Below are positions 1,933 through 64,000 of a stretch of 64,000 bases of DNA, piece after piece. Position 1 is the stretch's first letter; each line of letters starts with the position of its first letter. Location: positions 8,742,001 to 8,806,000 of the forward strand of contig NW_025764891.1 in the NCBI RefSeq assembly GCF_003918875.1. The letters are read 5' to 3'. The translations under genes and the position numbers were made by a program. This DNA is from Haliotis rubra. Taxonomy: Eukaryota. A model generated the notes under the pieces. The model made no database searches, had not been told where the DNA came from, and worked only from the letters and a program-made list of their open reading frames with translations.

Positions 1933-3170
1933 GTATGATGATTCTGATGGGCAATAGGGCAGGTTTTGGTCTTGGTTTAAAGGTCTTGAGGGTCTTGTTA
2001 AACTCAAACACAACAGGGGTACCTTGTATGATGATTCTGATGGGCAATAGGGCAGGTTTTGGTCTTGGTTTAAAGGTCTTGAGGGTCTTGTTAAACTCAA
2101 ACACAACAGGGGTACCTTGTATGATGCTTCTGATGGGCAATAGGGCAGGTTTTGGTCTTGGTTTAAAGGTCTTGAGGGTCTTGTTAAACTCAAACACAAC
2201 AGGGGTACCTTGTATGATGATTCTGATAGGCAATAGGGCAGGTTTTGGTCTTGGTTTAAAGGTCTTGAGGGTCTTGTTAAACTCAACACAACAGGGGTAC
2301 CTTGTATGATGATTCTGATAGGCAATAGGGCAGGTTTTGGTCTTGGTTTTAAAAGGTCTTGAGGGTCTTGTTAAACTCAAACACAACAGGGGTACCTTGT
2401 ATGATGCTTCTGATGGGCAATAGGGCAGGTTTTGGTCTTGGTTTAAAGGTCTTGAGGGTCTTGTTAAACTCAAACACAACAGGGGTACCTTGTATGATGC
2501 TTCTGATGGGCAATAGGGCAGGTTTGGTCTTGGTTTAAAGGTCTTGAGGGTCTTGTTAAACTCAAACACAACAGGGGTACCTTGTATGATGATTCTGATA
2601 GGCAATAGGGCAGGTTTTGGTCTTGGTTTAAAGGTCTTGAGGGTCTTGTTAAACTCAAAACACAACAGGGTACCTTGTATGATGATTCTGATGGGCAATA
2701 GGGCAGGTTTGGTCTTGGTTTAAAGGTCTTGAGGGTCTTGTTAAACTCAAACACAACAGGGGTACCTTGATTCTGATATGATGCTTCTGATGGGCAATAG
2801 GGCAGGGTTTGTTTGGTCTTGGTTTAAAGGTCTTGAGGGTCTTGTTAAACTCAAACACAACAGGGGTACCTTGTATGATGATTCTGATAGGCAATAGGGC
2901 AGGTTTTGGTCTTGGTTTAAAGGTCTTGAGGGTCTTGTTAAACTCAAACACAACAGGGGTACCTTGTATGATGATTCTGATAGGCAATAGGGCAGGTTTT
3001 GGTCTTGGTTTAAAGGTCTTGTGGGTCTTGTTAAACTCAAACACAACAGGGGTACCTTGTATGATGATTCTGATAGGCAATAGGGCAGGTTTTGGTCTTG
3101 GTTTAAAGGTCTTGAGGGTCTTGTTAAACTCAAACACAACAGGGGTACCTTGTATGATGATTTTGATTGG
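1933..3170. repeat. 93-bp minisatellite (about 13 copies)
   Basis: Unit gtatgatgattctgatgggcaatagggcaggttttggtcttggtttaaaggtcttgagggtcttgttaaactcaaacacaacaggggtacctt; 31-aa periodicity in the ORF track. Confidence 0.97.
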
Positions 3171-3469
3171 CAGTTGGCCAGGAATCTAAAGGCTTGGACA
3201 TCTCAAGGGTTTTGTTGAACTCAAAACATCCCACCTGTTAAATGAAAATGAGTTTTGTTTGATGATGACAGTAATGGAAGCATAGCACAGTGTCTCAGGT
3301 GTGGTGCTGACTAAAGATCATAGTTTAGATGAATCAGTTTATACCATTACCTGTGGATGTACTTAATTTTGTCCCCTTGTATGTGTGTCTCCTCCTCATC
3401 TACATGTTCAATTGTGTTTTTGTTTCCTTCTCTGCCTATGTCCATCTTGTTTTACTTGATGCAATACAA

Positions 3470-6647: not shown

Positions 6648-7785
6648 GACACCTGGATTTGACCTTGTTGTATAGGTAAGTCTCACCTGGATTATATCTG
6701 CTGTACTGGTATGTCTCATCTGGATCTGACCCTGCTGTATAGGTATATCTCACCTAGATTTGACCTTGTTGTATAGGTATGTCTCACCTAGATTTGACCT
6801 TGTTGTATAGGTATGTCTCACCTGGATCTGACCTTGTTGTATAGGGAAGTCTCACCTGGATCTCACCTAGATCTGACCTTATTGTGTAGGTATATCTCAC
6901 TTGGATCTGACCTTGCTGTAGAGATATGTCTCACCTCTATCTAACCCTGCTGTAATGGTATGTCTCACCTGGATCTCATCCTGCTGTAATGGTATGTCTC
7001 ACTTGGATGTTACCCTGCTATATAGGCATGTCTCACCTGGATCTGACCTTGTTGTATAGGTATGTCTCACCTGGATCTCACCTGCTGTAATGGTATGTCT
7101 CACCTGGATCTCATCCCTGCTGTAATGGTATGTCACACCTGGATCTTACCTTGTTGTATAGGTATATCTCACCTGGATCTCATCCTGCTGTAATGGTATA
7201 TCTAACCTGGATCTTACCTTGTTGTATAGGTATATCTCACCTGGATCTCATGCTGCTGTAATGGTATGTCACACCTGGATCTTACCTTGTTGTATAGGTA
7301 TATCTCACCTGGATCTTACCTTGTTGTATAGGTATATCTCACCTGGATCTCATCCTGCTGTAATGGTATGTCACACCTGGATCTTACCTTGCTGTATAGG
7401 TATATCTCACTTGGATCTGACACTGCTGTATAGGTATGTCACACCTGGATCTGACCTTGTTGTATAGGTATGTCTCACCTGGATCTTACCTTGCTGTATA
7501 GGTATATCTCACTTGGATCTGACACTGCTGTATAGGTATGTCACACCTGGATCTGACCTTGTTGTATAGGTATGTCTCACCTGGATCTAACCCTGCTGTA
7601 TAGGTATGTCACACCTGGATCTTACCTTGTTGTGTAGGTATATCTCAGTTGGATCTGACCCTGCTGTGTAGGTATGTCTCATCTGGATCTAACCCTGCTG
7701 TATTGGTATGTCTCACCTGGATCTAACCCTGCTGTAGAGATATGTCTCATCCGGATAAAAAACTGCTGTAATGGTATGTCTCACA
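6648..7785. repeat. 34-bp minisatellite (about 33 copies)
   Basis: Unit cacctggatctgaccttgttgtataggtatgtct, with a second variant catcctgctgtaatggtatg. Confidence 0.95.
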
Positions 7786-10077: not shown

Positions 10078-10343
10078 TACCTTTCTTTGGTGGATAAATA
10101 CTCAGACGCAACTGTATCCATTCAGGAAAATTGGTCATGCATGTGTTTATTATAATGAAATCACATAAAAAGTGTAGTTTTCTGTGAAAGTAATATTGTT
10201 AAACTCTTTAAGGTCTGGGGATTAAAAGGAGCCAGAGCTTCAACATTATTTCTGTGCCTAGAACTATCATGTGAAGAACTATGCTTTTGAAGTGGCTTTC
10301 TTTCCATTATCACTTGATTATGTGTAAGTTCTTCAGTGTAATG

Positions 10344-11208
10344 AGGATCAGATAGGTTATGAGGGGCAAGGTGGGGTGGAGTAAAGAAAGCTTGGGAGAT
10401 CTGTTGGGAGGATCAGATAGGTTATGAGGGGCAAGGTGGGGTGGAGTAAAGAAAGCTTGGGAGATCTGTTGGGAGGATCAGATAGGTTATGAGGGGCAAG
10501 GTGGGGTGGAGTAAAGAAAGCTTGGGAGATCTGTTGGGAGGATCAGATAGGTTATGAGGGGCAAGGTGGGGTGGAGTAAGAAAGCTTGGGAGATCTGTTG
10601 AGAGGATCAGATAGGTTATGATGGGGCAAGGTGGGGTGGAGTAAAAAAGCTTGGGAGATCTGTTGGGAGGATCAGATAGGTTATGAGGGGCAAGGTGGGG
10701 TGGAGTAAAGAAAGCTTGGGAGATCTGTTGGGAGGATCAGATAGGTTATGAGGGGGCAAGGTGGGGTGGAGTAAAAGAAAGCTTGGGAGTTCTGTTGGGA
10801 GGATCAGATAGGTTATGAGGGGCAAGGTGGGGTGGAGTAAAAAGAAAGCTTGGGAGATCTGTTGGGAGGATCAGATAGGTTATGAGGGGCAAGGTGGGGT
10901 GGAGTAAAAAGCTTGGGAGATCTGTTGGGAGGATCAGATAGGTTATGAGGGGCAAGGTGGGGTGGAGTAAAAGTAAAAGCTTGGGAGTTCTGTTGAGAGG
11001 ATCAGATAGGTTATGAGGGGCAAGGTGGGGTGGAGTAAAAAGAAAAAAAAGCTTGGGAGATCTGTTGGGAGGATCAGATAGGTTATGAGGGGCAAGGTGG
11101 GGTGGAGTAAAGAAAGCTTGGGAGATCTGTTGGGAGGATCAGATAGGTTATGAGGGGCAAGGTGGGGTGGAGTAAAGAAAGCTTGGGAGTTCTGTTGAGA
11201 GGATCAGG
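10344..11208. repeat. 65-bp purine/G-rich minisatellite (about 13 copies)
   Basis: Unit gatcagataggttatgaggggcaaggtggggtggagtaaagaaagcttgggagatctgttgggag; spacing 10346 to 10411. Confidence 0.97.
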
Positions 11209-11304
11209 TAGTGGTGTTGTTTCTGCTGGGACACAGACATGGACGGTGTCAGGCCAAGGATGGGATTGGTGGTTAAGGTTGGTTGTCATTACTTGTATTA
11301 TTAT

Positions 11305-16885: not shown

Positions 16886-17985
16886 AGAGATGCTAAGATA
16901 CCAGATATATGTAACACTCAATCTGCTTCCTATTCCTGTTGTCCGTCCCATAATCCCTGAACCAAATTATTTTCCCATCAACCCAGTCCTTCCTGCAATG
17001 CCAAAGCCCTAAATGAAGAAAGTGGACAATTCCTTAGGTCCATGTTATGAATTTCCCATCTCACTGGGGCTCCTTTTCAATTTAAATGGGATTACTTGTT
17101 GCTTACAAAATTATATACCGTTATATTTGAAGACAAAACGTTAGTCTGCTGTTCCTGAATCAACTCAGTACGAGCTACTTTTGTTGTACTTGTGTGTTGA
17201 GATTATTGTTCGACCTTGAGCCATGTTTGACATTGAGGAGAGGATGGAGAAGTGTGCTGTATTACATCCCTGTGTGAGATTTAATGTCATTTTGTTATGG
17301 AATTATTGATTACATAACTGGCAAAGTCTGCTCTCACCGGAGGAGACTGCTTCCTTTAGTAATGACGTTATTAATCATACACCTCGTCCAATGACAATGT
17401 GTATTTAAGTAGTGAGCAGGTGTGATTATTTGGGAAGAAAGGTGGAGGTAATTACACCAAGTCTCATGCAGCTGTTAGGTTTGGAAACATATAATTGATT
17501 GTTTTCATACAGGTGTACAAACCCTTGGTCTTGTAATTGTAACAGTCATAAATATTCTAAAGCCTGTGATGGGATTTAAACCATTGACCTTTGATCTGAC
17601 GTCTGACACCATGTTCAGGTGACCAAAATGTTTAATTCTGGCAGCAAGCTGTAAAGGTATATATGGATGTCATTTGTGGGAAGATTCCACACCTTGGTAC
17701 ATAGTGACCAGGGTTTTACCTCCACTCACAAATATGGGGTCCCTAATTATTAGTTTTAAGGACCCTTGCAGGCAATCCTGTGAAGTATCGGTGCAGAGCA
17801 CTGTATGTTTTGGTAATTATACCCCCGCTACGAAGTAACGGGGGTATATAGCGTTCATTCTGTCCGTCCGTCCCGAAACTTTGTCTGGAGCATATCTCTT
17901 AAAGTTTACATGCTAGGTTCACCAAACTTCACACACATGTTAATCATTACCCATTGATGTGCCTTTTGCTATTTTAAATTTTAAA

Positions 17986-24384: not shown

Positions 24385-25682
24385 AGACTGAGTCTGAGCC
24401 TGAGACTGAGTCTAACCCTGAGACTGAGACTGAGTCTAACCCTGAGACTGAGACTGAGCCTTACCCTGAGCCTGAGACTGAGTCTGAGCCTGAGCCTGAG
24501 CCTGAGTCTAACCCTGAGCCTGAGCCTGAGACTGAGTCTAACCCTGAGCCTGAGCCTGAGACTGAGTCTGAGCCTGAGCCTGAGCCTGAGACTGAGAGCC
24601 TGAGCCTGAGACTGAGTCTAACCCTGAGCCTGAGCCTGAGACTGAGTCTAAGCCTGAGCCTGAGACTGAGTCTGAGCCTGAGCCTGAGTCTGAGCCTGAG
24701 TCTAACCCTGAGTCTGAGACTGAGTCTGAGTCTGAGCCTGAGTCTAACCCTGAGTCTGAGACTGAGTCTAACCCTGAGCCTGAGCCTGAGACTGAGTCTA
24801 AGCCTGAGCCTGAGACTGAGTCTAACCCTGAGCCTGAGCCTGAGACTGAGTCTAACCCTGAGCCTGAGCCTGAGTCTAACCCTGAGCCTGAGACTGAGTC
24901 TAACCCTGAGTCTGAGACTGAGTCTGAGACTGAGTCTAAACTGAGTCTAACCCTGAGTCTGAGACTGAGTCTAACCCTGAGCCTGAGACTGAGTCTGAGC
25001 CTGAGCCTGAGTCTAACCCTGAGTCTAACCCTGAGTCTGAGACTGAGTCTGAGCCTGAGTCTAAACTGAGTCTAACCCTGAGTCTGAGCCTGAGACTGAG
25101 CCTGAGTCTGAGCCTGAGCCTGAGCCTGAGACTGAGTCTAACCCTGAGCCTGAGTCTGAGCCTGATCATGAGCCTGAGCCTGAGACTGAGTCTAACCCTG
25201 AGTCTGAGCCTGAGCCTGAGCCTGAGACTAACCCTGAGTCTGAGACTGAGTCTAACCCTGAGCCTGAGACTGAGTCTGAGCCTGAGCCTGAAACTGAGTC
25301 TAACCCTGAGTCTGAGACTGAGCCTGAGTCTGACTCTGACCCTGAGCCTGAGCCTGAGTCTGAGCCTGATCATGAGCCTGAGCCTGAGACTGAGCCTTAC
25401 CCTGAGACTGAGACTGAATCTATCCTTGAGTCTAACCCTGAGACTGAGACTGAGTCTAACCCTGAGCCTGAGAGTGAGACTGAGTCTAACCCTCAGACTG
25501 AGACTAACCCTGAGACTGAGTCTGAGCCTGATCATGAGCCTGAGACTGAGTCTAACCCTGAGACTGAGCCTGAGACTGAGTCTAACCCTGAGACTGACCC
25601 TGATCATGAGACTGAGACTGAGTCTAACCCTGAGCCTGAGCTTGAGCCTGAGCCTGAGGCTGAGCCTGAGACTGAGACTGAT
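24385..25682. repeat. Degenerate hexamer satellite (ctgagN) interspersed with ctaacc hexamers
   Basis: Near-strict 6-bp periodicity of ctgagc/ctgaga/ctgagt/ctaacc over about 1.3 kb. Confidence 0.95.
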
Positions 25683-51720: not shown

Positions 51721-52819
51721 AAAACATATCTTACTGACAGTCTACATGGCATGGTACCTTCCATCCACTGTTGATGAACATAACAGTATTACCTGCCTAA
51801 CAAACCTAATTATCCGAATCAGTGACACTGTCCAGGTGTACATGTCTAGCCCCGGCATCACGACACAACATGCCGATTTAAATACACCTCTCACATCTCA
51901 GACAATCTCCAACACTGCAGGGAACAGGATATTTTTAGACGCTATATTGACATGTTTAAGATGACATTGGAGCCAATGTGGTTGGCAGGAGCAATTCAAT
52001 AGGACATTGTCATTTTGTGTGTAGAGATTTGGGTCCACTTCGGGTGACAGATTGCAGGTCCCTTGGAGAAACATCAACCTTCCTGGGGGTAGAACATTAT
52101 TGTTGGCAATCGAAAGTGAACAGCTGTGTTGAGTAGGCTTCATGTGTTGGAGTGGGTTTCACATTGCATGGTCGTTTGCGGATCTGTTTTTGGAAGTTTA
52201 ATTCAGCGTTCTGAAAATGTGTTTTCTGGGTCAAGGCTGTTTGCTGGATCTGAGTGGGTCATAAATGGCTGTGTTTAATTACAGTGTGCAGCATATTAAT
52301 GGAAAGGTTCAAGTTTTCTTAAGGATAATATCCTTAAGTATCATATTCAAATGGATTTAATGACAATATCTGCTTCTGATGATGGTCTGATGGAAGCATG
52401 CAGCTCTTGTAGAGAGGTCAACTCAGAGTTTATAGCTTGTGGTACCTCTGAGATTTGAGAACATTTTGTGTACAAGATCAGATTTGTTCAGGTTATCATT
52501 GTATTTTCTGCATCAACATCAAGATTCTACATTAGAGATGAATAGTTCTGTGATCTGATGATCAGATTTTACAGGAGATCAGTGAATTTGTAGCTTCAGC
52601 ATCAAGATTTGACATCAGGACTGAGCAGCATGGTATGCCTGTCAGATCTAATGACAATTTTATATTTGTGTTCAGCTTTCTTACGGCAATCATTTTATTT
52701 TTCAGCTTCAACATCAAAATTTGACATCAGAATTGTGCAGACCTGTATACCTGTCACATCTGATGACAGTTTTATATAAGTGTTCATCTTTGTTATGAGG
52801 GATCATTTTATTTTTGCAG

Positions 52820-53036
52820 CGTCAACGTCGAGATTCCACATCAGAGCTGAGTGGCCCTGGGTATCTCTCAGACCTGATGACAATCTCCAGCTCTGATGAT
52901 GAGTCCAGCGAGGAGGAAAACAAGGTCCGGGGCAACTGGAGCGGGAGGTTTGAGTTTGTCCTGTCCTGTCTGGGATACATTGTTGGACTGGGAAATGTCT
53001 GGAGGTTCCCCTACCTTGTCTACAGGAATGGCGGTG
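52820..53036 (+). CDS. SLC6 (NSS) Na+/Cl--dependent amino-acid transporter, glycine/proline-transporter-like; exon encoding N-terminal tail and TM1
   Basis: Translates [10 protein letters not shown]...[40 protein letters not shown](G), containing the SLC6 signature [10 protein letters not shown]. Acceptor ttttattttt-gcag ends at 52819 (phase 0); donor G|gtaagt at 53037 (phase 1). In-frame ATG at 52877. Confidence 0.96.
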
Positions 53037-55029: not shown

Positions 55030-55930
55030 ATTGACAGATCCCTAAAGTATTCCGGGGTGATTCCCTGTCACACCTGTAGTGATTGAAGTCAGTCATAAAG
55101 TAGTTCATATTGATTCCTTGACATATCTGCATGGATGGAAGTCTACAGATACTACAACAACTATTCACTGGCACACCTGTACTGACGGAAGTCCTTCGTT
55201 AGTTCCAAAATATTTCCCTGACACATCTGTAGTGAGGGAAGTCCTAAGGTAGTTCCACATTGACTCCCTGACATACCTGTAATGACTAAAGTCCTAGGGT
55301 AGTTCCACAATGACTCCTTAACACACCTGTAATGATAAAAATCCTAGGGTAGTTGCACAATGTTTCCTTGACACACCTGTAGTGACAAAAGTCCTAGGGT
55401 AGTTCAACAATGACTCCTTGGCACACCTGTAATGACAAAAGTCCTAGGGTAGTTCCACAATGATTCCCTGACATACCTGTAATGACAAAAGTCCTAGGGT
55501 AGTTTGACAATGTATCCTTGACACACCTGTAGTGACAAAAGTCCTAGGGTAGTTCCACAATGATTCCCTGACATACCTGTAATGACAAAAGTCCTAGGGT
55601 AGTTCGACAATGTTTCCTTGACACACCTGTAATGACAAAAGTCCTAGGGTAGTTCCACAATGTTTCGTTGACACACCTGTAGTGACAAAATCACGCTGAA
55701 GACCCGGGTTCGATTCCCCACATGGGCACAATGTGTTAAGCCCATTTCTGGTGTCCCCCGCCATGATATTGCTGGAATATTGCTAAAAGCGGCGAAAACT
55801 AAACTCAGTCAGTCAGTCAGTCAGTGACAAAAGTCCTAGGGTAGTTCCACAATGATTCCCTGACATACCTGTATGAAGTCTACAGATGCTACAACAGCTA
55901 TTCCCTTACACACCTGTACTGACCAAAGTC
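55030..55930. repeat. 50-bp minisatellite in the SLC6 intron
   Basis: gtcctagggtagttccacaatgattccctgacatacctgtaatgacaaaa; spacing 55441 to 55491. Confidence 0.93.
55691..55823 (+). mobile_element. 5'-truncated SINE family A inserted in the 50-bp minisatellite
   Basis: Flanked by the duplicated gtgacaaaa from the repeat unit. Confidence 0.88.
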
Positions 55931-56213: not shown

Positions 56214-56345
56214 GTGCGTTCTTCATCCCCTATCTGATAATGCTGGTGTTCTGTGGCATCCCCTTGGTGTACATGGAGCTGGCCTTTGGGCAGTATGCCA
56301 GTCTTGGACCTATCACCATCTGGAGAGCAGTGCCACTGTTTAAAG
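56214..56345 (+). CDS. SLC6 transporter exon encoding TM2 (132 bp)
   Basis: ttcactattctag|GT GCG TTC... gives (G)[43 protein letters not shown](G)|gtaagg. Phase 1-1; joins the previous exon in frame to give the canonical NGGGAF. Confidence 0.96.
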
Positions 56346-56899
56346 GTAAGGCTGTTGGTTTTTCAGCATTATCTTCCTCTGAAACAACAAGGTCGTGATG
56401 ACATAACAGGGCTCAACTGAAGGATTTACACCTTGCAAACTGAAACTGCAAATTTCAGCCATCATATTGATGCCACCTTGCACCCAAAGCATGTTGATAT
56501 TTTGCTGTTCAAAGAACACAGACTTCGGCTGAAAAGCTTAACTTTGAGGAACAGACTTTGAACAGTGACTGATGACTACACATTGTTGCTGTTCATGTGA
56601 TGCAATTTTATGAAATATGATAAAATGATCTGACCCAGAATGATTTAGTTAAATGCTGTTCTAATTCATCAATACCTATACTCAAGCACTGTATATAACT
56701 CTAGCAGCAGGTGCAACCAGCTTTTGTCTGGTGTAACAAGGTTATTACCTATGGTTGCACGGAAAGTACTTTTCATTTTCTGAAGTCAAGCCCTGTATGA
56801 CACTGTATACAATGTGCTGTAAGTGTCTTTATGACCCCATTGAACTCCACTGGTTGTGTAGCCTAGTGCTTGGTTAAAGCATTTACTTATCATGCTGAT

Positions 56900-57252
56900 G
56901 ACCGCCTCTGTGGTGTAGTGGTTAGAGCGTCCGCCCGGGAGAGCGGAAGGACGCGGGTTCGATCCCCGACCGCGTCATACCAAAATACGTTAAAATATGG
57001 TACTTGTTGGTCCCTGCCTGGCGCTCGGCATTAATGGGTACAACAAGGACTGGTCGGCCCGGAGTCAGTATAATGTGTCTGAGTGGGGTATTCATGCTTC
57101 ACTGTGGCATGGTATCTCAGTGAGCTAGCACTATAAAACCAGCTTAAGTCTGGGCTAGTACAAGCAGCCACACATACACATACACACGCATGCACGTCGT
57201 CATATGAGCGAAATATTCTCAAGCATGATGTTAAACCCAATTTCACCTCACC
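56900..57252 (+). mobile_element. tRNA-derived SINE family D (resembles molluscan MESC-type SINEs), inserted in an old family A copy
   Basis: A box tggtgtagtgg, B box ggttcgatccc, (cacct)n tail, TSD tatcatgctgat. Confidence 0.88.
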
Positions 57253-57642
57253 TATCATGCTGATAGCCTCAGTTCAATTCGACACATGGGCAACGTAATA
57301 TTATTGGAAATATCATTTATAGATAATAGTATTCTCCAGTCCTATATTTGCCAGGGCATGTGTATTCGACATTGCTCAGATATTTCATCAGATCCCATTC
57401 TGAAATTTGGCGTGAAATGAGTGAATTGGCCACAGTGCAACATTCTATAGAACGTGTATAGAAAGTAGCCCATCATTAAAGTGAGCTACAGCATATTGTT
57501 CGATGTATGACCCTTGTCTGTATTCAAACTGTCTTGCAGATACAGCTGCTGATTACAAATCCTTATATATCATTTAATTTCAGTGGAGGAATATATACTT
57601 ATTAAAAGAAATTAAGGAAATGTCATAACATATAGACATACT

Positions 57643-57949
57643 AGGTGAGGTGAGGTGAAATTGGGTTTAACGTCGTGCTTGAGAATATTTTGCTCATATG
57701 ACGACGTGCATGTGTGTGTATGTGTATGTGCTTGTACTAGCCCAGACCTAAGCTGGTTTTATAGTGCTAGCCCACTGAGATACCATGCTGCAGTGAAGCA
57801 TGAATACCCCACTCAGACAAATTATACTGACTCCGAGCTGACCAGTCCTTGTTGTACCCATTAATGCCGTGGTATGACGCAGTCGGGGATCGAACCGGCG
57901 ACCTTCCGCTCTCTGGTCGGACGCTCTAACCACTACACAACAGAGGCGG
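57643..57949 (-). mobile_element. SINE family D, inverted copy with an internal deletion
   Basis: Reverse complement of 56900-57252, lacking about 45 bp after cgtcatacca. Confidence 0.88.
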
Positions 57950-58985
57950 TGTTTGTGTGGGTGTTTACACCGCACTCAGCAATATTCCTGCTACATGGCG
58001 ACGATCTGTAAATAATTGAGTCTAGGCCAGACAATCCAGTGATCAATAGCATGAGCATCGATCCAAGCAAATGGGATACAATAACATGTGTCAACCAAGT
58101 TAGCGAGCCTGACCACCCGATCCAGTTTGTCGCTTCTTACGACAAGCATGGGTTGCTGAAGACCAAATCTAATCCGGATCTTCACGGTTCAGGCATACCA
58201 TGACAGGGCCTCAAAAACGTGTTTGAGTAGTATATCCTTGAGTGTTGTCGTAATAACATGCATTTTTAGAATAATTTCCAGAATTCTAAGTGTCTTCATT
58301 TTTTTCTTTGTATTTAATTCTTTTCGTTTGCGCTGAAAACATTTTCTTGATAAGGTGTGCATCATGGCAGTCAGGAAAAATCTATAAAACAAGACATGGA
58401 GTTGGAGAGGCAATACAAAGCCGGATTAGATGTGTGGACAGGCACTGTCTCCCACACATGCCTCGCCCTCTCCTGACATGAATAATGTCCACACTCCCTT
58501 GGATGTACTTGAGTCACCCAGAATAACCTCGCTACACATAAACATGTCACACAAGTCTCCTAAAATCTAATCTTACCCCACCTAGACAAGGCATTCCTTG
58601 GGCTGTTGTGTCATTAATTGTTTCAGGTAACTATGTCACTGTTATATGGTGGGACTGTATTTCATTCTTGGGGCATGGTGGTTTTGATCATGAGGCTGAG
58701 AGTACTTGAATATTCAATATACAGGTGTAGGCATGTGGTTAATGGAAATGTATTCCTAGAAATATGAAATACAGTTAAATTACTTTTAATCCTGGAATGT
58801 TCCATGCCAGTTTGCATAGGGACAGGAGGCCCAAAATAACTTGGTTTGATGCTTAACTCCTAGAAATATATATATATCCCCCCCCAAAAAATCGTGCTCA
58901 TCATAATTTGTGTGTAGGTAGCTTGTCCATTAAGTCAGAACATAAACCTATTTTGGTTTTTCATAATTCCTTTTATAAAAAGCAG

Positions 58986-59153
58986 GGTGGTGGGGTAGCC
59001 CAGTGGTTAAAGCATTGGCTCGTCACGCCGAAGACCCGGGTTCGAATCCCCACATGGGTACAATTTGTGAAGCCAAATTCTGGTGTCCCCCGCCGTGATG
59101 TTGCTGGAATATTGCTAAAAGCGGCGTAAAACCAAACTCAGTCAGTCAGTCAG
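58986..59153 (+). mobile_element. SINE family A
   Basis: Near-consensus copy; TSD tataaaaagcag. Confidence 0.92.
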
Positions 59154-61276
59154 TATAAAAAGCAGATTATTACTTGGAGTTGAGTTGTCTATTACAGACA
59201 ATAGCAATTAACTTGACTATGTGGGCTGTATTTGAGCAGCACCAGCCGTCAGTGCCCACATTTCACAACTTTAATGACTCTGTCTCAAAAGTTGGTTGAT
59301 CTGCATTACAGTGTTCAAGGCGTCAGAAAAACTTGCAAAAATATTTATGATAGACATGTGGAGGACATTTCAGAATTTGACATATCAGCGGCAAATATTA
59401 TGTCTGATGCAATTCTGTATTCTGATTAGTCTGTCTTACAATCCCTGAACCATATTTGCCCTATAGCCTAGTCCTCCCTGCAATGCTAAAGCCCTGAATG
59501 AAGCATGTCTAGATTTCCTCAGGATCTGAATCTCTGGTCTCCCTGCGGCTCCTTTTCAATTTAAATGGGTTTATTTGTTACAATCAAAATTATATATATT
59601 CAGAGACTAAGCATTAGTCTATATTCTGATTTGCCCTGTATGTTCCCATGTTTTACAGGTGAACAGTTGGCATGCCTTTGCATGTGTTTTTGATGAGTGC
59701 CGCCATAGGGCAGGGTTTGTTTACCTATTCACAAACACATGATGTCATCCACATATGATAGTATTTCATGCACATGCACACTTCTCTTAAAGATTTGTTA
59801 TGATTATAGAAATTGTAGAAATCTTTTTGTTGTGTAGTCCCCTGCTGTGATATTGCTGGAATATTGCTAAACGTGGAGTAAAGCTAAACTCACTCACTTT
59901 ATTTGTTTAGGGATGGGCAGATATAGGTCTTGAAAGTCATTTAGAAGTTGGACGAACATGAATACATGACAAGTTTTTAGCTACTTCTTAGATCTGAAAT
60001 GTTGTGTAAAGAATAAAAAGAAGTTGTTATCCATAAAAACGTGTCATGTATTGATGGGCAAATGCTTAAAAAAGATAACATATTGGCCTGATATGTGAGC
60101 ATGTTTCTCCGTGTTGATGTTCACTGAATTGATGACTAAGAAAAACATTCAAGGAATGGATTTGATATAATTTTAACGAACATAAAAAGGATTGTTAAAT
60201 ACTGATGTGTCAAAATGGGTAGGTACTGCTTTTAGCCAAGGTTGTCAAGACCATGTGTGTTTGATTAGGAGTTGAGAAATGTTCTTGACAAGACGGAAGA
60301 CTTCAGTTACAAGGAGATGACATCATAGTCAGGGAGGATGTGCTCAAGAGGCTCTACTTCTGCACCTGGTGGGATAGGAGAAGCAGGACTGGCTTCTTAG
60401 AACATCAAATAGTAAACAGAACAAGAAAAAACATCGATCCAATCAATGTCAGAATCCAGTTCTTCTGTAAAATGAGAAATTTTAACACACCTACGTTGCT
60501 ATGTGTGTGGTGAAGTTTGAAAAATTGATTTTCAAAGATTATTCATGAACTATGTTTTTTGGTGAGATCAAGTGTATCTCTTGGTGTCAACATGCCAAGA
60601 GGCAGACAACACTGTGAGGAGTTCTGGTTATTCTGGAATGAAGCTAATACAAAACTACTGGCAATTACTTTCTCAAATTAGTCATTTATTATCAGAGTTT
60701 TTTTACCATTACTTTAACATGAGTATGATAATCTGTATAACAAAAAACAAATGAATCTGACTTGAGAAATATCCATTTTCATCAGTCAACAAGAATGGGA
60801 AGGTGATATTTGAAGGTGAGAATCATATGTTATCATTGAGAATGATTTATTCAAAAACACACACAATGAAATGATTAGGGGTATTTGAATATTTAAATGA
60901 CACAAATATATATATCGTTATTGTTCATGAGAGAACTTGAAAGTAATACTGTAGGGTAATTTTCCTTTCTTAGAAAAAGACGCGGGGTAATTCTTACCTG
61001 TTTATTAATGCAGCTTGCCAGTGTTTATAGCTGAGTTTTCAATACAGTTCATATCATGTGCTCAAGGGAAGGTGAGGTGACTTTATCATAGTACTTTGCG
61101 TTAGAGATTGAGATGAAAAAGACAAAAGGGGCATTTTCAAACAAATAAAATTTCATACAATTATACTGTTGCCCAACTTTATAATGTTATTACAATTCAA
61201 AGTTACGTCACAGTAATCTCGCCCTGTAGATAAGTTTCTATGTTTCTTTCCATGGATGTATTCAGAACTGCAAAGT

Positions 61277-61587
61277 GGAGCACAGTGGTGTAGTGGTTAG
61301 CATGCTGGCCTCTCACACCAAAGGCCCAGGTTCGAATCCCGATGGAGACACCAAAATTTGTGATTTGGGTCTCATACTGTGTTGTGTCCCTGGGCAAAGC
61401 ACTTTGTCCACATTGCACTCAGTCCACCCAGCTGTTCAAAATGGGTACCTGAGAAGCGGATGTAAGGACCTATACGGGGCTTAGTAGCAGCTTTGAAAGT
61501 ACAATTCCATCAGGGTAATAATGTAATGCCAGAGAACAGCATTGAGTTGGATCCGAAGCGCAAAAATTAGCATTTATATTATTATTA
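61277..61587 (+). mobile_element. tRNA-derived CORE-type SINE family E
   Basis: A box tggtgtagtgg, B box ggttcgaatcc, CORE-like gtgtccctgggcaaagcactt...ctcagtccacccagctgttcaaaatgggtacc, (tta)n tail. Confidence 0.8.
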
Positions 61588-61665
61588 AAGTTAGTTAGTA
61601 TTGCTAGATAATAGAATTATGTTTGATATCTCTGGGATGGATTAGCCTGCTGTCTGTATTGTGAA

Positions 61666-61830
61666 GGTGCGGTGGGGTAGCCTAGTGTCTAAGGCGTTCG
61701 CTCGTCACGCCGAAGTCCCGGGTTCGATTCCCTACATGGGTACAATGTGTGAAGCCCATTTCTGGTGTCCCCCGCCGTGATATTGCTGGAATATTGCTAA
61801 AAGCGGCGTAAAACCCAACTCACTCACTCA
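61666..61830 (+). mobile_element. SINE family A
   Basis: Near-consensus copy; TSD ctgtattgtgaa. Confidence 0.92.
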
Positions 61831-62043
61831 CTGTATTGTGAAACCATTCCAGGAGACCTCAGCTGTTGTTTGAATATTGCCTTGAACTGCAGAAACTTAA
61901 AACCATATGCTCTCACACAACTATAACTTTGTAAGAATAAGTTATCTCATAAGTAAATTATTGTTAGATTTTTCTGTTTCCATCCATGATAGACATGAAT
62001 CAATTATTGATGGATTTTATAACCAGAGTACTAGTTCAGAACA

Positions 62044-62282
62044 TAGGGTGGAAATAACTTTAAACTTGCTAGTGTACTCCGGTACAGTTTCACATGTAAA
62101 ATCACTTGCCCCGATAAGTTTCCCACTATACCAGCCGTCTTCTTGTTGATTTCTTAAATAAACAACATAATTAACATTAGAAAGTCAACTGGACACCGGT
62201 ATTGGGTGATATACAAATTTGCTTGCCTGACAGAAAAAAACACTGGACTCGGACATCGGGCAATGGGTTATTTCCACCCCTG
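62044..62282. mobile_element. hAT-like MITE
   Basis: tagggtggaaataac ... gttatttccacccctg inverted termini; TSD unclear. Confidence 0.5.
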
Positions 62283-63447
62283 GGAACACCATGTTATAAT
62301 CACAGGCTTATTATTCTCTAGTTGGTATATTTATGTGGAGAAATGATCAACTGGAAAAGAAGCTGTTGTTGAAGAAAATATCCTATCTGCTTGATTTCTC
62401 ACAACACACGTGCAGTCTGAGTTGGTGCCAAGGCAAATATATCTTACACTCAAATCATCCTGTGTGATAAATATTCTAATGTAAGCATTTAAAACATGAA
62501 AGAGCTCTTCCAGGCTAAATGCTTTGTTTTAATGACATGAAATGAAAACTGTGCGTAAACATTTCCACTTCAGTGAGCAAAGTCTCTGCACAAATGAAAG
62601 TTAGGTGTTTTTCTTATGTAAGAAAATAATTAAACTTGGGAGATGATGATTTTGTTTGAAGACAAAAGTTTCAAACTATTTTTGTAGATAGAAGTATAGG
62701 TCTTATTTTAGGCTGCACTACCATACATGCTTTATGTTTATGAAACTGCCAAACTTGAAGTTTTAGAAAATAGAACATAAATACTAATTAAATGCTGTTT
62801 TTTGCAATGCTGTCACTTATCTTTTTCCTATTTAAAAGACTTAAGTTTTCAAACCCGAAAGTTTTTTCAATAAATAGACTAACAGTGTGTTGTCCTTATG
62901 TCAAATAATGCAAAAACTTATGTAAATTCTTAACAAAACAGTTTTTCATGTAAAGAAAAATACAAAAATAAGGGAATGGACTATTTTCAGTTGAGAAAAG
63001 CACCTGGTTACATTTTGATTGACTTGCACTAACTTTTTTTTCTTTAAATGACTTGGCATAGCCAAATGTTTTGTTAATGTTTTCAAAACCCAGTGAACTC
63101 TCTAGTCCTGGTGAACTGGAAGATGTGGGTGAGATGAAGACAGTATAACAAGGAACAGGTGAAGTTCAGACGCCTCTGTGCACACTGTGTGGGTGTGTTT
63201 AATCATTGTACACTTAGTTTTCAAGGTGTATCCATCAGGGTTATGTCGTACTGTTGGAGGCTAGTATTAACACACTACTTAGTCTCTTCCACTGCATTAG
63301 GCTGATGTGGATGGATGCCTTATATTTTCACGTATCTATTTACATACAAAATGTGCTGTATGCTACTTAACTCTTTGTCACAGGAATTGTGTTTCTTTTT
63401 GTACTGAATCCTTTGTATTTGTATTGTTTCTATTCCCTCTGGTACAG

Positions 63448-64000
63448 GTATTGGGTATACCTTTGTGCTCATTCCTCTGCTACAGGTATTGGGTATTCCT
63501 TTGTTCTCACTCCTCTGCTACAGGTATTGGGTATTACTTTGTGCTCACTCCTCTGCTACAGGTATTGGGTATTCCTTTGTTCTCACTCCTCTGCTACAGG
63601 TATTTGGTATTCATTTGTGGCATTCCTTTGTTTTCACTTTGTGCTACTCCTCTGCTACAGGTATTGGGCATTCCTTTGTTCTCACTCCTCTGCTACAGGT
63701 ATTGGGCATTACTTTGTGCTCACTCTTTTGCTACAGGTATTGGGTATTACTTTGTGCTCACTCCTTCCTCTGCTACAGGTATTGGGTATTCCTTTGTGCT
63801 CACTCCTCTGCTACAGGTATTGGGTATTCCTTTGTGCTCACTCCTCTGCTACAGGTATTGGGTATTACTTTGTGCTCACTCCTCTGCTACAGGTATTGGG
63901 TATTCCTTTGTGCTCACTCCTCTGCTACAGGTATTGGGTATTACTTTGTGCTCACTCCTCTGCTACAGGTATTGGGTATTACTTTGTGCTCACTCCTCTG
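63448..64000 (+). repeat. 38-bp tandem array built from the acceptor and first codons of the next SLC6 exon (TM3 start, GIGY); the true exon body probably lies beyond the window
   Basis: Unit gtattgggtattcctttgtgctcactcctctgctacag. Joined to the phase-1 donor at 56345 it reads FK-G-I-G-Y-S/T/Y-F-V-L, the expected SLC6 continuation. 14 cag|gt junctions at 63448, 63486, 63524, 63562, 63600, 63661, 63699, 63737, 63779, 63817, 63855, 63893, 63931, 63969. Confidence 0.88.

What the first reader, a model, noticed from the sequence alone, without database searches (positions are those of the whole stretch)
63421..64000. Minisatellite made of a gene's own splice acceptor: at least 14 tandem AG|GT junctions at the start of the SLC6 TM3 exon
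Seen: each 38-bp unit joins about 24 nt of exon start (GT ATT GGG TAT TCC TTT GTG CTC, G-I-G-Y-S-F-V-L after the phase-1 donor at 56345) to about 14 nt resembling the unique intron end (ctcctctgctacag vs ttccctctggtacag at 63433-63447). Every unit therefore rebuilds a pyrimidine tract plus cag, followed immediately by GT. The consensus unit has no stop in any + frame, and 38 is not a multiple of 3. Established: FKGIGY is the conserved SLC6 continuation, and tandem duplication across an AG|GT site is the Rogers model of intron gain. Inference: the spliceosome has three options. It can skip at least 13 decoy acceptors, ratchet through them by recursive AG|GT splicing, or use upstream ones. Among regular units every third acceptor keeps frame (+38 hydrophobic residues) and the others frameshift towards NMD. 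Copy number would then act as a heritable splicing rheostat for the transporter.
Basis: partly seen in the sequence, partly recalled or inferred. Interest (0 to 1): 0.85.

Follow-up and report, generated by a model that had tools for sequence, protein, structure and literature searches.

The report
Splice-junction ("mirage") minisatellite in SLC6 intron
A 38-base repeat at the end of this transporter gene's intron really is built from copies of the junction between the intron and the next exon, but such "mirage" minisatellites are already described in amphioxus, where they leave splicing intact, and nothing here shows that this one regulates the gene.

Summary
From 63448 to the window end there are 14 tandem units, mostly 38 bp, and each carries CAG|GTATTGGGTAT. 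Two decayed units lie just upstream (63380-63447).

The unit is very probably derived from the gene's own intron-2/exon-3 junction:
- It is the only phase-compatible G-[IVL]-G-[YF] acceptor on the + strand of the window. About 0.003-0.08 are expected by chance in the intron.
- It aligns across the exon-3 junction of the closest relative found (L002) at 25 of 33 nt. Likeness stops about 23 nt into the exon.

The exon body lies beyond the window and I could not fetch it, so the authentic last copy was not seen.

This is a known kind of structure. "Mirage" minisatellites are tandem copies of exon/intron boundaries. They are described in amphioxus Adh3, globin, troponin C and PGBD5, where RT-PCR showed normal splicing. 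The same gene has a second, decayed example at the TM1-exon acceptor. The relative L002 has two textbook junction arrays. Other first readers of this scan noted similar arrays in at least seven other genes of this genome; I did not check those.

The "splicing rheostat" idea has no support. The one RNA run laid has zero depth on the array.

Verdict: new member of a known kind, possibly the first noted in a mollusc.

The parts
52495..52819 (+). Decayed upstream duplicates of the TM1-exon acceptor junction (intron end plus exon start). This is a second, older junction repeat in the same gene.
   Evidence: TRF period 112, 2.6 copies, 52592-52884. Local alignment of 52772-52900 against the upstream sequence: 52660-52768 matches at 84 of 111 across the junction; weaker copies lie at 52587-52658 and 52495-52541.
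52820..53036 (+). SLC6 exon encoding the N-terminal tail and TM1 (...[17 protein letters not shown], plus G in phase 1).
   Evidence: Acceptor ttttgcag, donor G|gtaagt.
56214..56345 (+). SLC6 TM2 exon ([10 protein letters not shown]...WRAVPLFK) with a phase-1 donor G|gtaagg.
   Evidence: Relatives' ORF fragments are 84-91% identical and carry PF00209.
56346..63379 (+). Intron 2 before the array: unique stretches interleaved with very high-copy repeats at about 58001-58200, 58800-60200 and 61200-62400. It holds no other candidate exon-3 start.
   Evidence: Word depths. No phase-compatible G[IVL]G[YF] acceptor outside the array.
63380..63447 (+). Two decayed 5' edge units of the array. Their AG|GT junctions are degraded to ACAG|GA and TTT|GT.
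   Evidence: Local alignment to the consensus unit; 0-3 of 2000 shuffles reach the score.
63448..64000 (+). Regular array of 14 units (38 nt; one of 61, one of 42, the last cut by the window end). Each unit is about 23 nt of exon-3 start (GT ATT GGG TAT TCC TTT GTG CTC) plus about 15 nt of intron end (ACTCCTCTGCTACAG). Every unit has a CTCAC branch-point-like motif, a pyrimidine tract and CAG|GT.
   Evidence: Junction homology with L002, L003 and L001.

Best explanation
This is a 'mirage'-type minisatellite. A short tandem duplication once spanned the boundary between intron 2 and the TM3 exon of this SLC6 gene, taking about 15 nt of intron end and about 23 nt of exon start. Slippage or unequal exchange then amplified that 38-bp segment into an array of at least 16 copies. 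The interior of the array is kept homogeneous by turnover, and its 5' edge has decayed.

All copies except the last lie inside the intron. I infer that the authentic acceptor is the final copy, next to the exon body just beyond the window end. I also infer that the gene is spliced mainly from donor 56345 to that copy, with the upstream copies silent or giving only minor, noisy products.

On this reading the array exists because this minisatellite-rich genome generates such duplications often, and junction-spanning ones are tolerated. It does not need to do anything for the transporter.

Shown: the array, its junction-derived unit, the edge decay, and other junction arrays in this gene and in a relative.
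Inferred: the position of the real exon, which acceptor is used, and neutrality.
For: - Array and its 14 AG|GT junctions.
- Strict AG|GT-ATH-GGN-TAY is expected 0.003 times, and the loose G[IVL]G[YF] form 0.08 times, per shuffled 7-kb intron. It is found only in the array and nowhere else on the + strand of the window.
- Exon 3 of relatives starts cag|GT ATT GGA TAT GCC ATG GTT CTT (GIGYAMVL, L002), GIGYAMIL (L003) and GVGYAMVV (L001).
- The unit aligns across the L002 junction at 25 of 33 nt; 0 of 1000 shuffles reach the score. By hand count, 17 of the first 23 exon nt match, against 5 of the next 15.
- Decayed edge units and a 98-99% identical tail are the published turnover pattern (PMC3087553).
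- A second junction duplicate sits at the TM1 exon, with the authentic copy at its 3' end.
- In L002 a 54-bp x 25 array of an acceptor junction ends in the authentic TM6 exon. A 35-bp x 58 array of a donor junction starts at the authentic exon end.
- The window holds more than a dozen minisatellite arrays in 64 kb.
- Published mirages (units of 10-160 bp) do not disturb splicing (PMC3087553, PMC3902484).
Against: - The 3' end of the array and the exon-3 body are outside the window and could not be fetched, so the authentic last copy was not seen.
- There is no RNA evidence of any kind for this gene.
- All 14 junctions keep an intact CAG|GT with a pyrimidine tract and a branch-point-like CTCAC. 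On sequence alone they look like usable acceptors, so some decoy use cannot be excluded.
- Normal splicing is carried over from amphioxus, a different phylum.
Confidence: 0.75

Rival explanations
1. Copy-number-dependent splicing rheostat. The decoy acceptors compete with the real one. In-frame choices add hydrophobic residues, out-of-frame ones feed NMD, and so array length tunes transporter output heritably.
For: Every unit keeps CAG|GT, a pyrimidine tract and a CTCAC branch-point-like motif. All + frames are open. The middle bin 63601-63800 has very low depth in X1 and roughly flank-level depth in X3, which hints that the internal structure differs between individuals.
Against: There are no RNA data. 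Invariance of the junctions is expected from homogenisation in a young array and is no sign of selection. Published mirages splice normally (PMC3087553, PMC3902484). Similar arrays occur at unrelated junctions and genes, which fits a mutational process better than gene-specific regulation. The depth hint is weak, because the tool states that a hole proves nothing.
Confidence: 0.05
2. Recursive (ratchet) splicing. Because the exon starts with GT, each AG|GT regenerates a 5' splice site after joining. The intron would then be removed stepwise through the array and end in the normal mRNA.
For: AG|GT is juxtaposed in all 14 units, preceded by a pyrimidine tract. The intron is at least 7.6 kb long.
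Against: The regenerated donor would be G|GTATTG, which lacks the +5 G. The gene's own donors are GTAAGT and GTAAGG. Steps of 38 nt are shorter than any workable intron. Junction arrays in L002 include an acceptor unit, CAG|GG, that has no GT, so AG|GT is incidental to the class. No lariat or sawtooth data exist.
Confidence: 0.05
3. Chance resemblance. This is an ordinary intronic minisatellite whose unit happens to read cag|GIGY, and the real exon 3 is unrelated and further downstream.
For: The exon body was not seen. The genome is full of minisatellites. A reader searching for GIGY would notice any such match.
Against: Chance expectation is 0.003-0.08. Likeness to relatives' junctions extends to 8 codons and into the intron end and then stops.
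Confidence: 0.1
4. Assembly artefact, or a dead gene. Either the array is a collapsed or expanded misassembly, or the locus is a pseudogene lacking exon 3.
For: The window ends inside the array. Short-read contigs stop at its edge. PMC3087553 reports a mirage that was misassembled in a draft genome.
Against: Array words are present, with raised depth in two of the runs, in three independent DNA runs of two labelled organisms, and the 5' edge is crossed by an X1 contig. Exons 1 and 2 are intact with canonical splice sites.
Confidence: 0.05

Closest known systems
'Mirage' minisatellites of amphioxus (Adh3: Canestro et al. 2002, as cited in PMC3087553; globin genes BflGb6 and BflGb9: PMC3087553; troponin C and PGBD5: PMC3902484)
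   Same: Minisatellite-like tandem copies of an intron/exon boundary. The unit is an intron end plus an exon start. The 38-bp unit lies within the published 10-160 bp range. Many units keep AG/GT signals. The interior is homogenised and the edge units are decayed. Several such arrays occur per genome.
   Different: The host is reported by earlier scan agents to be an abalone (a mollusc), not a cephalochordate; I did not verify this. At least 14-16 copies are visible here, against 3-6 in the globin genes. The exon starts with GT, so each unit is an AG|GT. Normal splicing and length polymorphism are not shown here.
Rogers model of intron gain by tandem duplication of an AGGT-containing exon segment (tested experimentally in PMC3265369; natural case in PMC4974935)
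   Same: Tandem duplication creates extra splice signals. PMC3087553 suggests mirages could seed new introns.
   Different: Here the duplicated AG is the acceptor of an existing intron. The duplication lengthens that intron and creates no new one.
Recursive splice sites (juxtaposed AG|GT in long introns; from general knowledge)
   Same: A pyrimidine tract plus AG, directly followed by GT.
   Different: Recursive sites are single and conserved, with a strong regenerated donor. These are 38-nt-spaced copies with a weak GTATTG and no RNA evidence.
Intronic VNTRs of human SLC6 genes (SLC6A4 intron 2 STin2 and SLC6A3 VNTRs; general knowledge; PMC9909461 for SLC6A3)
   Same: A polymorphic tandem repeat inside an intron of an SLC6 transporter gene, discussed as a dosage modifier.
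   Different: The human VNTRs are not made from a splice junction, and their proposed action is on transcription, not acceptor choice. There is no homology.

Membership tests
Mirage minisatellite | Head-to-tail minisatellite array | tested here: met
   Period 38, at least 14 regular units plus 2 decayed ones.
Mirage minisatellite | The unit spans an exon/intron boundary of the host gene (intron end plus exon start) | tested here: met
   The phase-1 fit gives GIGYSFVL. The unit aligns across the exon-3 junction of L002 (25 of 33 nt, 0 of 1000 shuffles) and of L003 and L001. Chance expectation is 0.003-0.08.
Mirage minisatellite | The authentic junction and exon body sit at the end of the array | not testable with these tools
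   The array runs off the window at 64000. Attempts to fetch downstream DNA failed. The feature is seen in the relative L002 and at the TM1 exon of this gene.
Mirage minisatellite | Concerted evolution in the interior, with edge units excluded from homogenisation | tested here: met
   Tail units are 98-99% identical, and the 5' edge units are decayed with lost AG|GT.
Mirage minisatellite | Length instability between haplotypes or individuals | tested here: inconclusive
   Bin 63601-63800 is nearly empty in X1 and near flank level in X3, but well covered in X4. An X1 allele has 6 extra bases at 63416-63420. The tool warns that holes prove nothing.
Mirage minisatellite | Regular splicing is not disturbed | not testable with these tools
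   The only RNA-labelled run laid has zero depth over 62401-64000.
Recursive splice site | The regenerated 5' splice site is strong after joining | tested here: not met
   The regenerated site would be G|GTATTG, without the +5 G. The gene's own donors are GTAAGT and GTAAGG. This is a judgement against the consensus; no scoring model was run.
Recursive splice site | Recursive intermediates or lariats in RNA | not testable with these tools
   No RNA coverage.
Rogers-type intron gain | A duplicated exonic AGGT creates a new intron between the copies | tested here: not met
   The AG belongs to the pre-existing intron 2. Relatives have an intron at the same position without any array.

The most novel reading that the evidence does not exclude
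Junction-anchored minisatellites may be a systematic feature of this mollusc lineage and not just tolerated accidents. If so, arrays of donor and acceptor copies would be generated preferentially at splice junctions, for example by a transcription- or splicing-coupled mutational process. They would be handled by a dedicated outermost-site or stepwise splicing rule, and their length could modulate isoform output or seed new introns. What leaves this open: two junction arrays fill a single intron in L002, and unverified notes report many further cases in this genome.
Probability: 0.07. Interest if true: 0.8.

Novelty: new member of a known kind. Interest (0 to 1): 0.35.

Why it matters
The locus is a natural experiment in splice-site choice. 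At least 14 near-perfect copies of a real acceptor sit directly upstream of an essential, conserved transporter exon.

If the gene still splices correctly, that shows how strongly exon context, and not the acceptor motif itself, decides the choice.

If the genome is a mollusc, as earlier scan notes say, the 'mirage' phenomenon would no longer be a cephalochordate curiosity. It would also occur in a second minisatellite-rich animal lineage. That would make a genome-wide census worthwhile: how often it occurs, at which junctions, and whether it leads to intron lengthening or intron gain.

It also matters for annotation. Gene predictors and short-read assemblers are likely to stumble at such arrays.

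Tried and rejected
- my only search of protein representatives used the wrong reading frame (56215-56343 instead of 56216-56344).
- The search for homologous proteins with exon 2 and with the 90-aa ORF around exon 2 returned only ORF-style fragments from relatives. None came from the window's own species, so the annotated full-length protein and its locus could not be reached. The tool's length window excludes 600-aa proteins for such short queries.
- The array translation as a query gave 1424 candidates but none significant. No look-alike array ORF of 101-322 aa is in the collection.
- An exact look-up of the window's exon-2 ORF found nothing on record.
- A scan of metagenome contigs for the 23-nt junction core gave 0 matches.
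- Read laying: I chose 58001-64000. High-copy repeats in the intron swamped the joints, loose-ends and pieces tables, so no loose ends or contigs inside the array were listed. A narrow stretch around the array would have been better. The 'RNA?' runs turned out to hold only the intronic repeats.
- The 114-bp higher-order period was rejected.
- The 50-bp array in intron 1 (55172-55690) was tested as a possible exon-2 junction repeat and is not one: 735 of 1000 shuffles score as high.
- The protein-atlas search gave only generic SLC6 clusters.
- Searching papers for the relatives' run and assembly accessions found nothing.
- The original mirage paper (PMC117041) is not held.

Full report
WHAT IS THERE

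The last 550 bases of the window are a tandem array. Tandem Repeats Finder gives 63436-64000, period 38, 15.2 copies. Cutting at each G|GTATT gives 14 units: eleven of 38 nt, one of 61, one of 42, and a final one cut by the window end. The 15-mer CAGGTATTGGGTATT, with up to two mismatches, occurs 14 times, all in the array. Shuffles give 0.2 on average. All three forward frames are open across the array, and the reverse frames are full of stops.

63380-63447 aligns to the unit as two decayed copies whose AG|GT has been lost. Between 0 and 3 of 2000 shuffles reach the score. The tail units are 98-99% identical at lags of 38, 76 and 114, so the 114-bp period is not a real higher-order repeat.

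GENE CONTEXT

An SLC6 (PF00209) gene runs on the + strand. The TM1 exon is 52820-53036. The TM2 exon is 56214-56345 and ends ...WRAVPLFK plus one G, followed by gtaagg. The next exon must therefore start in phase 1, and G + GT ATT GGG TAT reads G-I-G-Y. No other phase-compatible G-[IVL]-G-[YF] acceptor exists between the donor and the array, or anywhere else on the + strand of the window. A shuffled 7-kb intron yields 0.08 loose and 0.003 strict matches.

IS THE UNIT REALLY THE GENE'S OWN JUNCTION?

I could not obtain the sequence after position 64000, so the exon body was not seen. The test had to be comparative.

ORF-style fragments of relatives led to three loci that carry exon 3. L002 is the closest relative: exon 2 is 115/132 nt identical and the 3' part of exon 1 is 101/125. 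Its exon 3 starts tttcag|GT ATT GGA TAT GCC ATG GTT CTT, which reads GIGYAMVL. L003 reads GIGYAMIL and L001 reads GVGYAMVV. The unit reads GIGYSFVL.

At nucleotide level the unit aligns across the L002 junction at 25 of 33 positions, including 8 of 11 in the intron end. None of 1000 shuffles reach that score. By hand count, 17 of the first 23 exon nucleotides match, then only 5 of the next 15. The unit is therefore about 23 nt of exon start joined to about 15 nt of intron end.

RAW-DATA CHECK

Logan contigs of three DNA runs (two samples of organism A, one of organism B) and one run guessed to be RNA were laid on 58001-64000.
- The array bins carry word depth in all three DNA runs: up to about 5 times the flank in X3 and 12 times in X4.
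- An X1 contig (63344-63465) crosses from unique intron into the decayed units, with a 6-base insertion allele at 63416-63420.
- Bin 63601-63800, which holds the irregular units, is almost empty in X1 and near flank level in X3, but covered in X4. This is a hint of structural polymorphism and no more.
- No listed contig bridges into the regular array by the tool's 31-letter rule, and array length is unverified.
- The RNA-labelled run has zero depth from 62401 to 64000. It holds only the very high-copy repeats inside the intron.

So there is no transcript evidence for or against any acceptor.

THE SAME STRUCTURE ELSEWHERE

In this gene, the acceptor junction of the TM1 exon also has decayed upstream duplicates. 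52660-52768 matches at 84 of 111 across the junction, and the authentic copy lies at the 3' end.

In L002, one intron is almost wholly made of two junction arrays.
- The first is 58 copies of a 35-bp unit: the last 24 nt of the TM5/6 exon plus 11 nt of intron start (...ATATACAG|GTATGAATTT). It begins at the authentic donor.
- The second is 25 copies of a 54-bp unit: intron end plus exon start (ctgtttcag|GGACGCGATCC...). It ends in the authentic TM6 exon, RDAILVCVGDTLMSVLAGFAVFAVIG....

Other first-stage readers noted at least seven further splice-junction minisatellites in other genes of this genome. Those notes are unverified and I did not test them. The window itself has more than a dozen minisatellite arrays in 64 kb.

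WHAT IS KNOWN

Tandem repeats that span an exon/intron boundary were named 'mirages' in amphioxus. They were first reported at Adh3 (units of 10-72 bp, with somatic length instability), then in globin genes (150-160 bp, 3 and 6 copies on two haplotypes), in troponin C, and in imperfect form in PGBD5.

The authors report four points that matter here:
- Many units keep AG/GT signals.
- Interior units are homogenised and edge units are not.
- RT-PCR shows regular splicing.
- One draft-genome copy was misassembled.

They also discuss mirages as a possible route to intron gain (PMC3087553; PMC3902484).

The present array meets every defining feature that I could test. The untestable ones are the authentic terminal copy and normal splicing. 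My literature searches found no description of such arrays in molluscs. Earlier follow-up agents of this scan call the genome abalone. I did not verify that. One abalone paper reports a polymorphic 27-bp intronic minisatellite, but it is not junction-derived.

HOW IT MOST LIKELY WORKS

A tandem duplication spanning the junction was amplified by slippage or unequal exchange. The copies upstream of the last one are simply part of a longer intron.

Each copy looks like a usable acceptor on sequence. It has CTCAC 14 nt upstream of the AG, about 70% pyrimidines in the tract, and CAG. So the choice of the last copy must rest on exon context: the exon body and its downstream donor. That step is inferred from the amphioxus data and is not shown here.

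- Invariant junctions are expected from homogenisation.
- The regenerated donor GTATTG is weak, and 38-nt steps are too short for an intron.
- Junction arrays without an AG|GT pairing occur in L002, so the pairing here is a by-product of the exon starting with GT.
- The Rogers intron-gain label does not apply, because the intron already existed and relatives have it at the same position without an array.

VERDICT

The structure is real and correctly described. It is a new member of a known kind, possibly a first for molluscs. The regulatory interpretation is unsupported.

My confidence that this is a mirage-type array with the authentic acceptor at its far end is 0.75. Interest is 0.35. The more general question, why junction-anchored minisatellites are so frequent in this lineage, is the part worth following up.

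ERRORS AND LIMITS

My one representative-library search used the wrong frame. My one read-laying run was too wide and was swamped by intronic repeats. The sequence beyond 64000 was never obtained.

Noticed in passing
window 52495-52884: Decayed tandem duplicates (period about 112) of the TM1-exon acceptor junction: about 48 nt of intron end plus about 63 nt of exon start, 76% identical, with the authentic copy last. This is a second mirage-like structure in the same gene.
   Followed up: yes
L002 15876-19297: In the closest relative's SLC6 gene, one intron consists almost wholly of two junction arrays. One is 58 copies of a 35-bp donor-junction unit starting at the authentic exon end. The other is 25 copies of a 54-bp acceptor-junction unit ending in the authentic TM6 exon. 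Between them (17897-17940) lies a stray copy of an earlier exon segment (GDAATQVFFT).
   Followed up: partly
protein P0007 (107 aa, on a 574,615-bp ENA contig): An ORF in a relative reads through about two and a half partial copies of the TM2-exon peptide (...FMEM.F.QY.SLG.ITIWKAVPL.K...). This suggests tandem duplication of exon pieces in another SLC6 gene.
   Followed up: no
window 58001-58200, 58800-60200, 61200-62400: Intron 2 holds extremely high-copy repeats. Summed contig word depth reaches the millions, against about 100-180 for unique flanks. They are also present in the RNA-labelled run X15, and many joints link 59045-59154 with 61665-61832, so these are copies of one element family.
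   Followed up: no
window 1-64000: The minisatellite load is very high. More than a dozen arrays score 150 or more, for example 93 bp x 13 (1933-3172), 34 bp x 33 (6650-7784), 65 bp x 13 (10343-11211), 12 bp x 108 (24388-25681) and 50 bp x 10 (55172-55690). The last was tested and is unrelated to the exon-2 junction.
   Followed up: partly
window 63416-63420: Contigs of run X1 carry 6 extra bases (G, ACA, AG) and a T>A change inside the decayed edge unit. This is an allele of the array's 5' edge.
   Followed up: no
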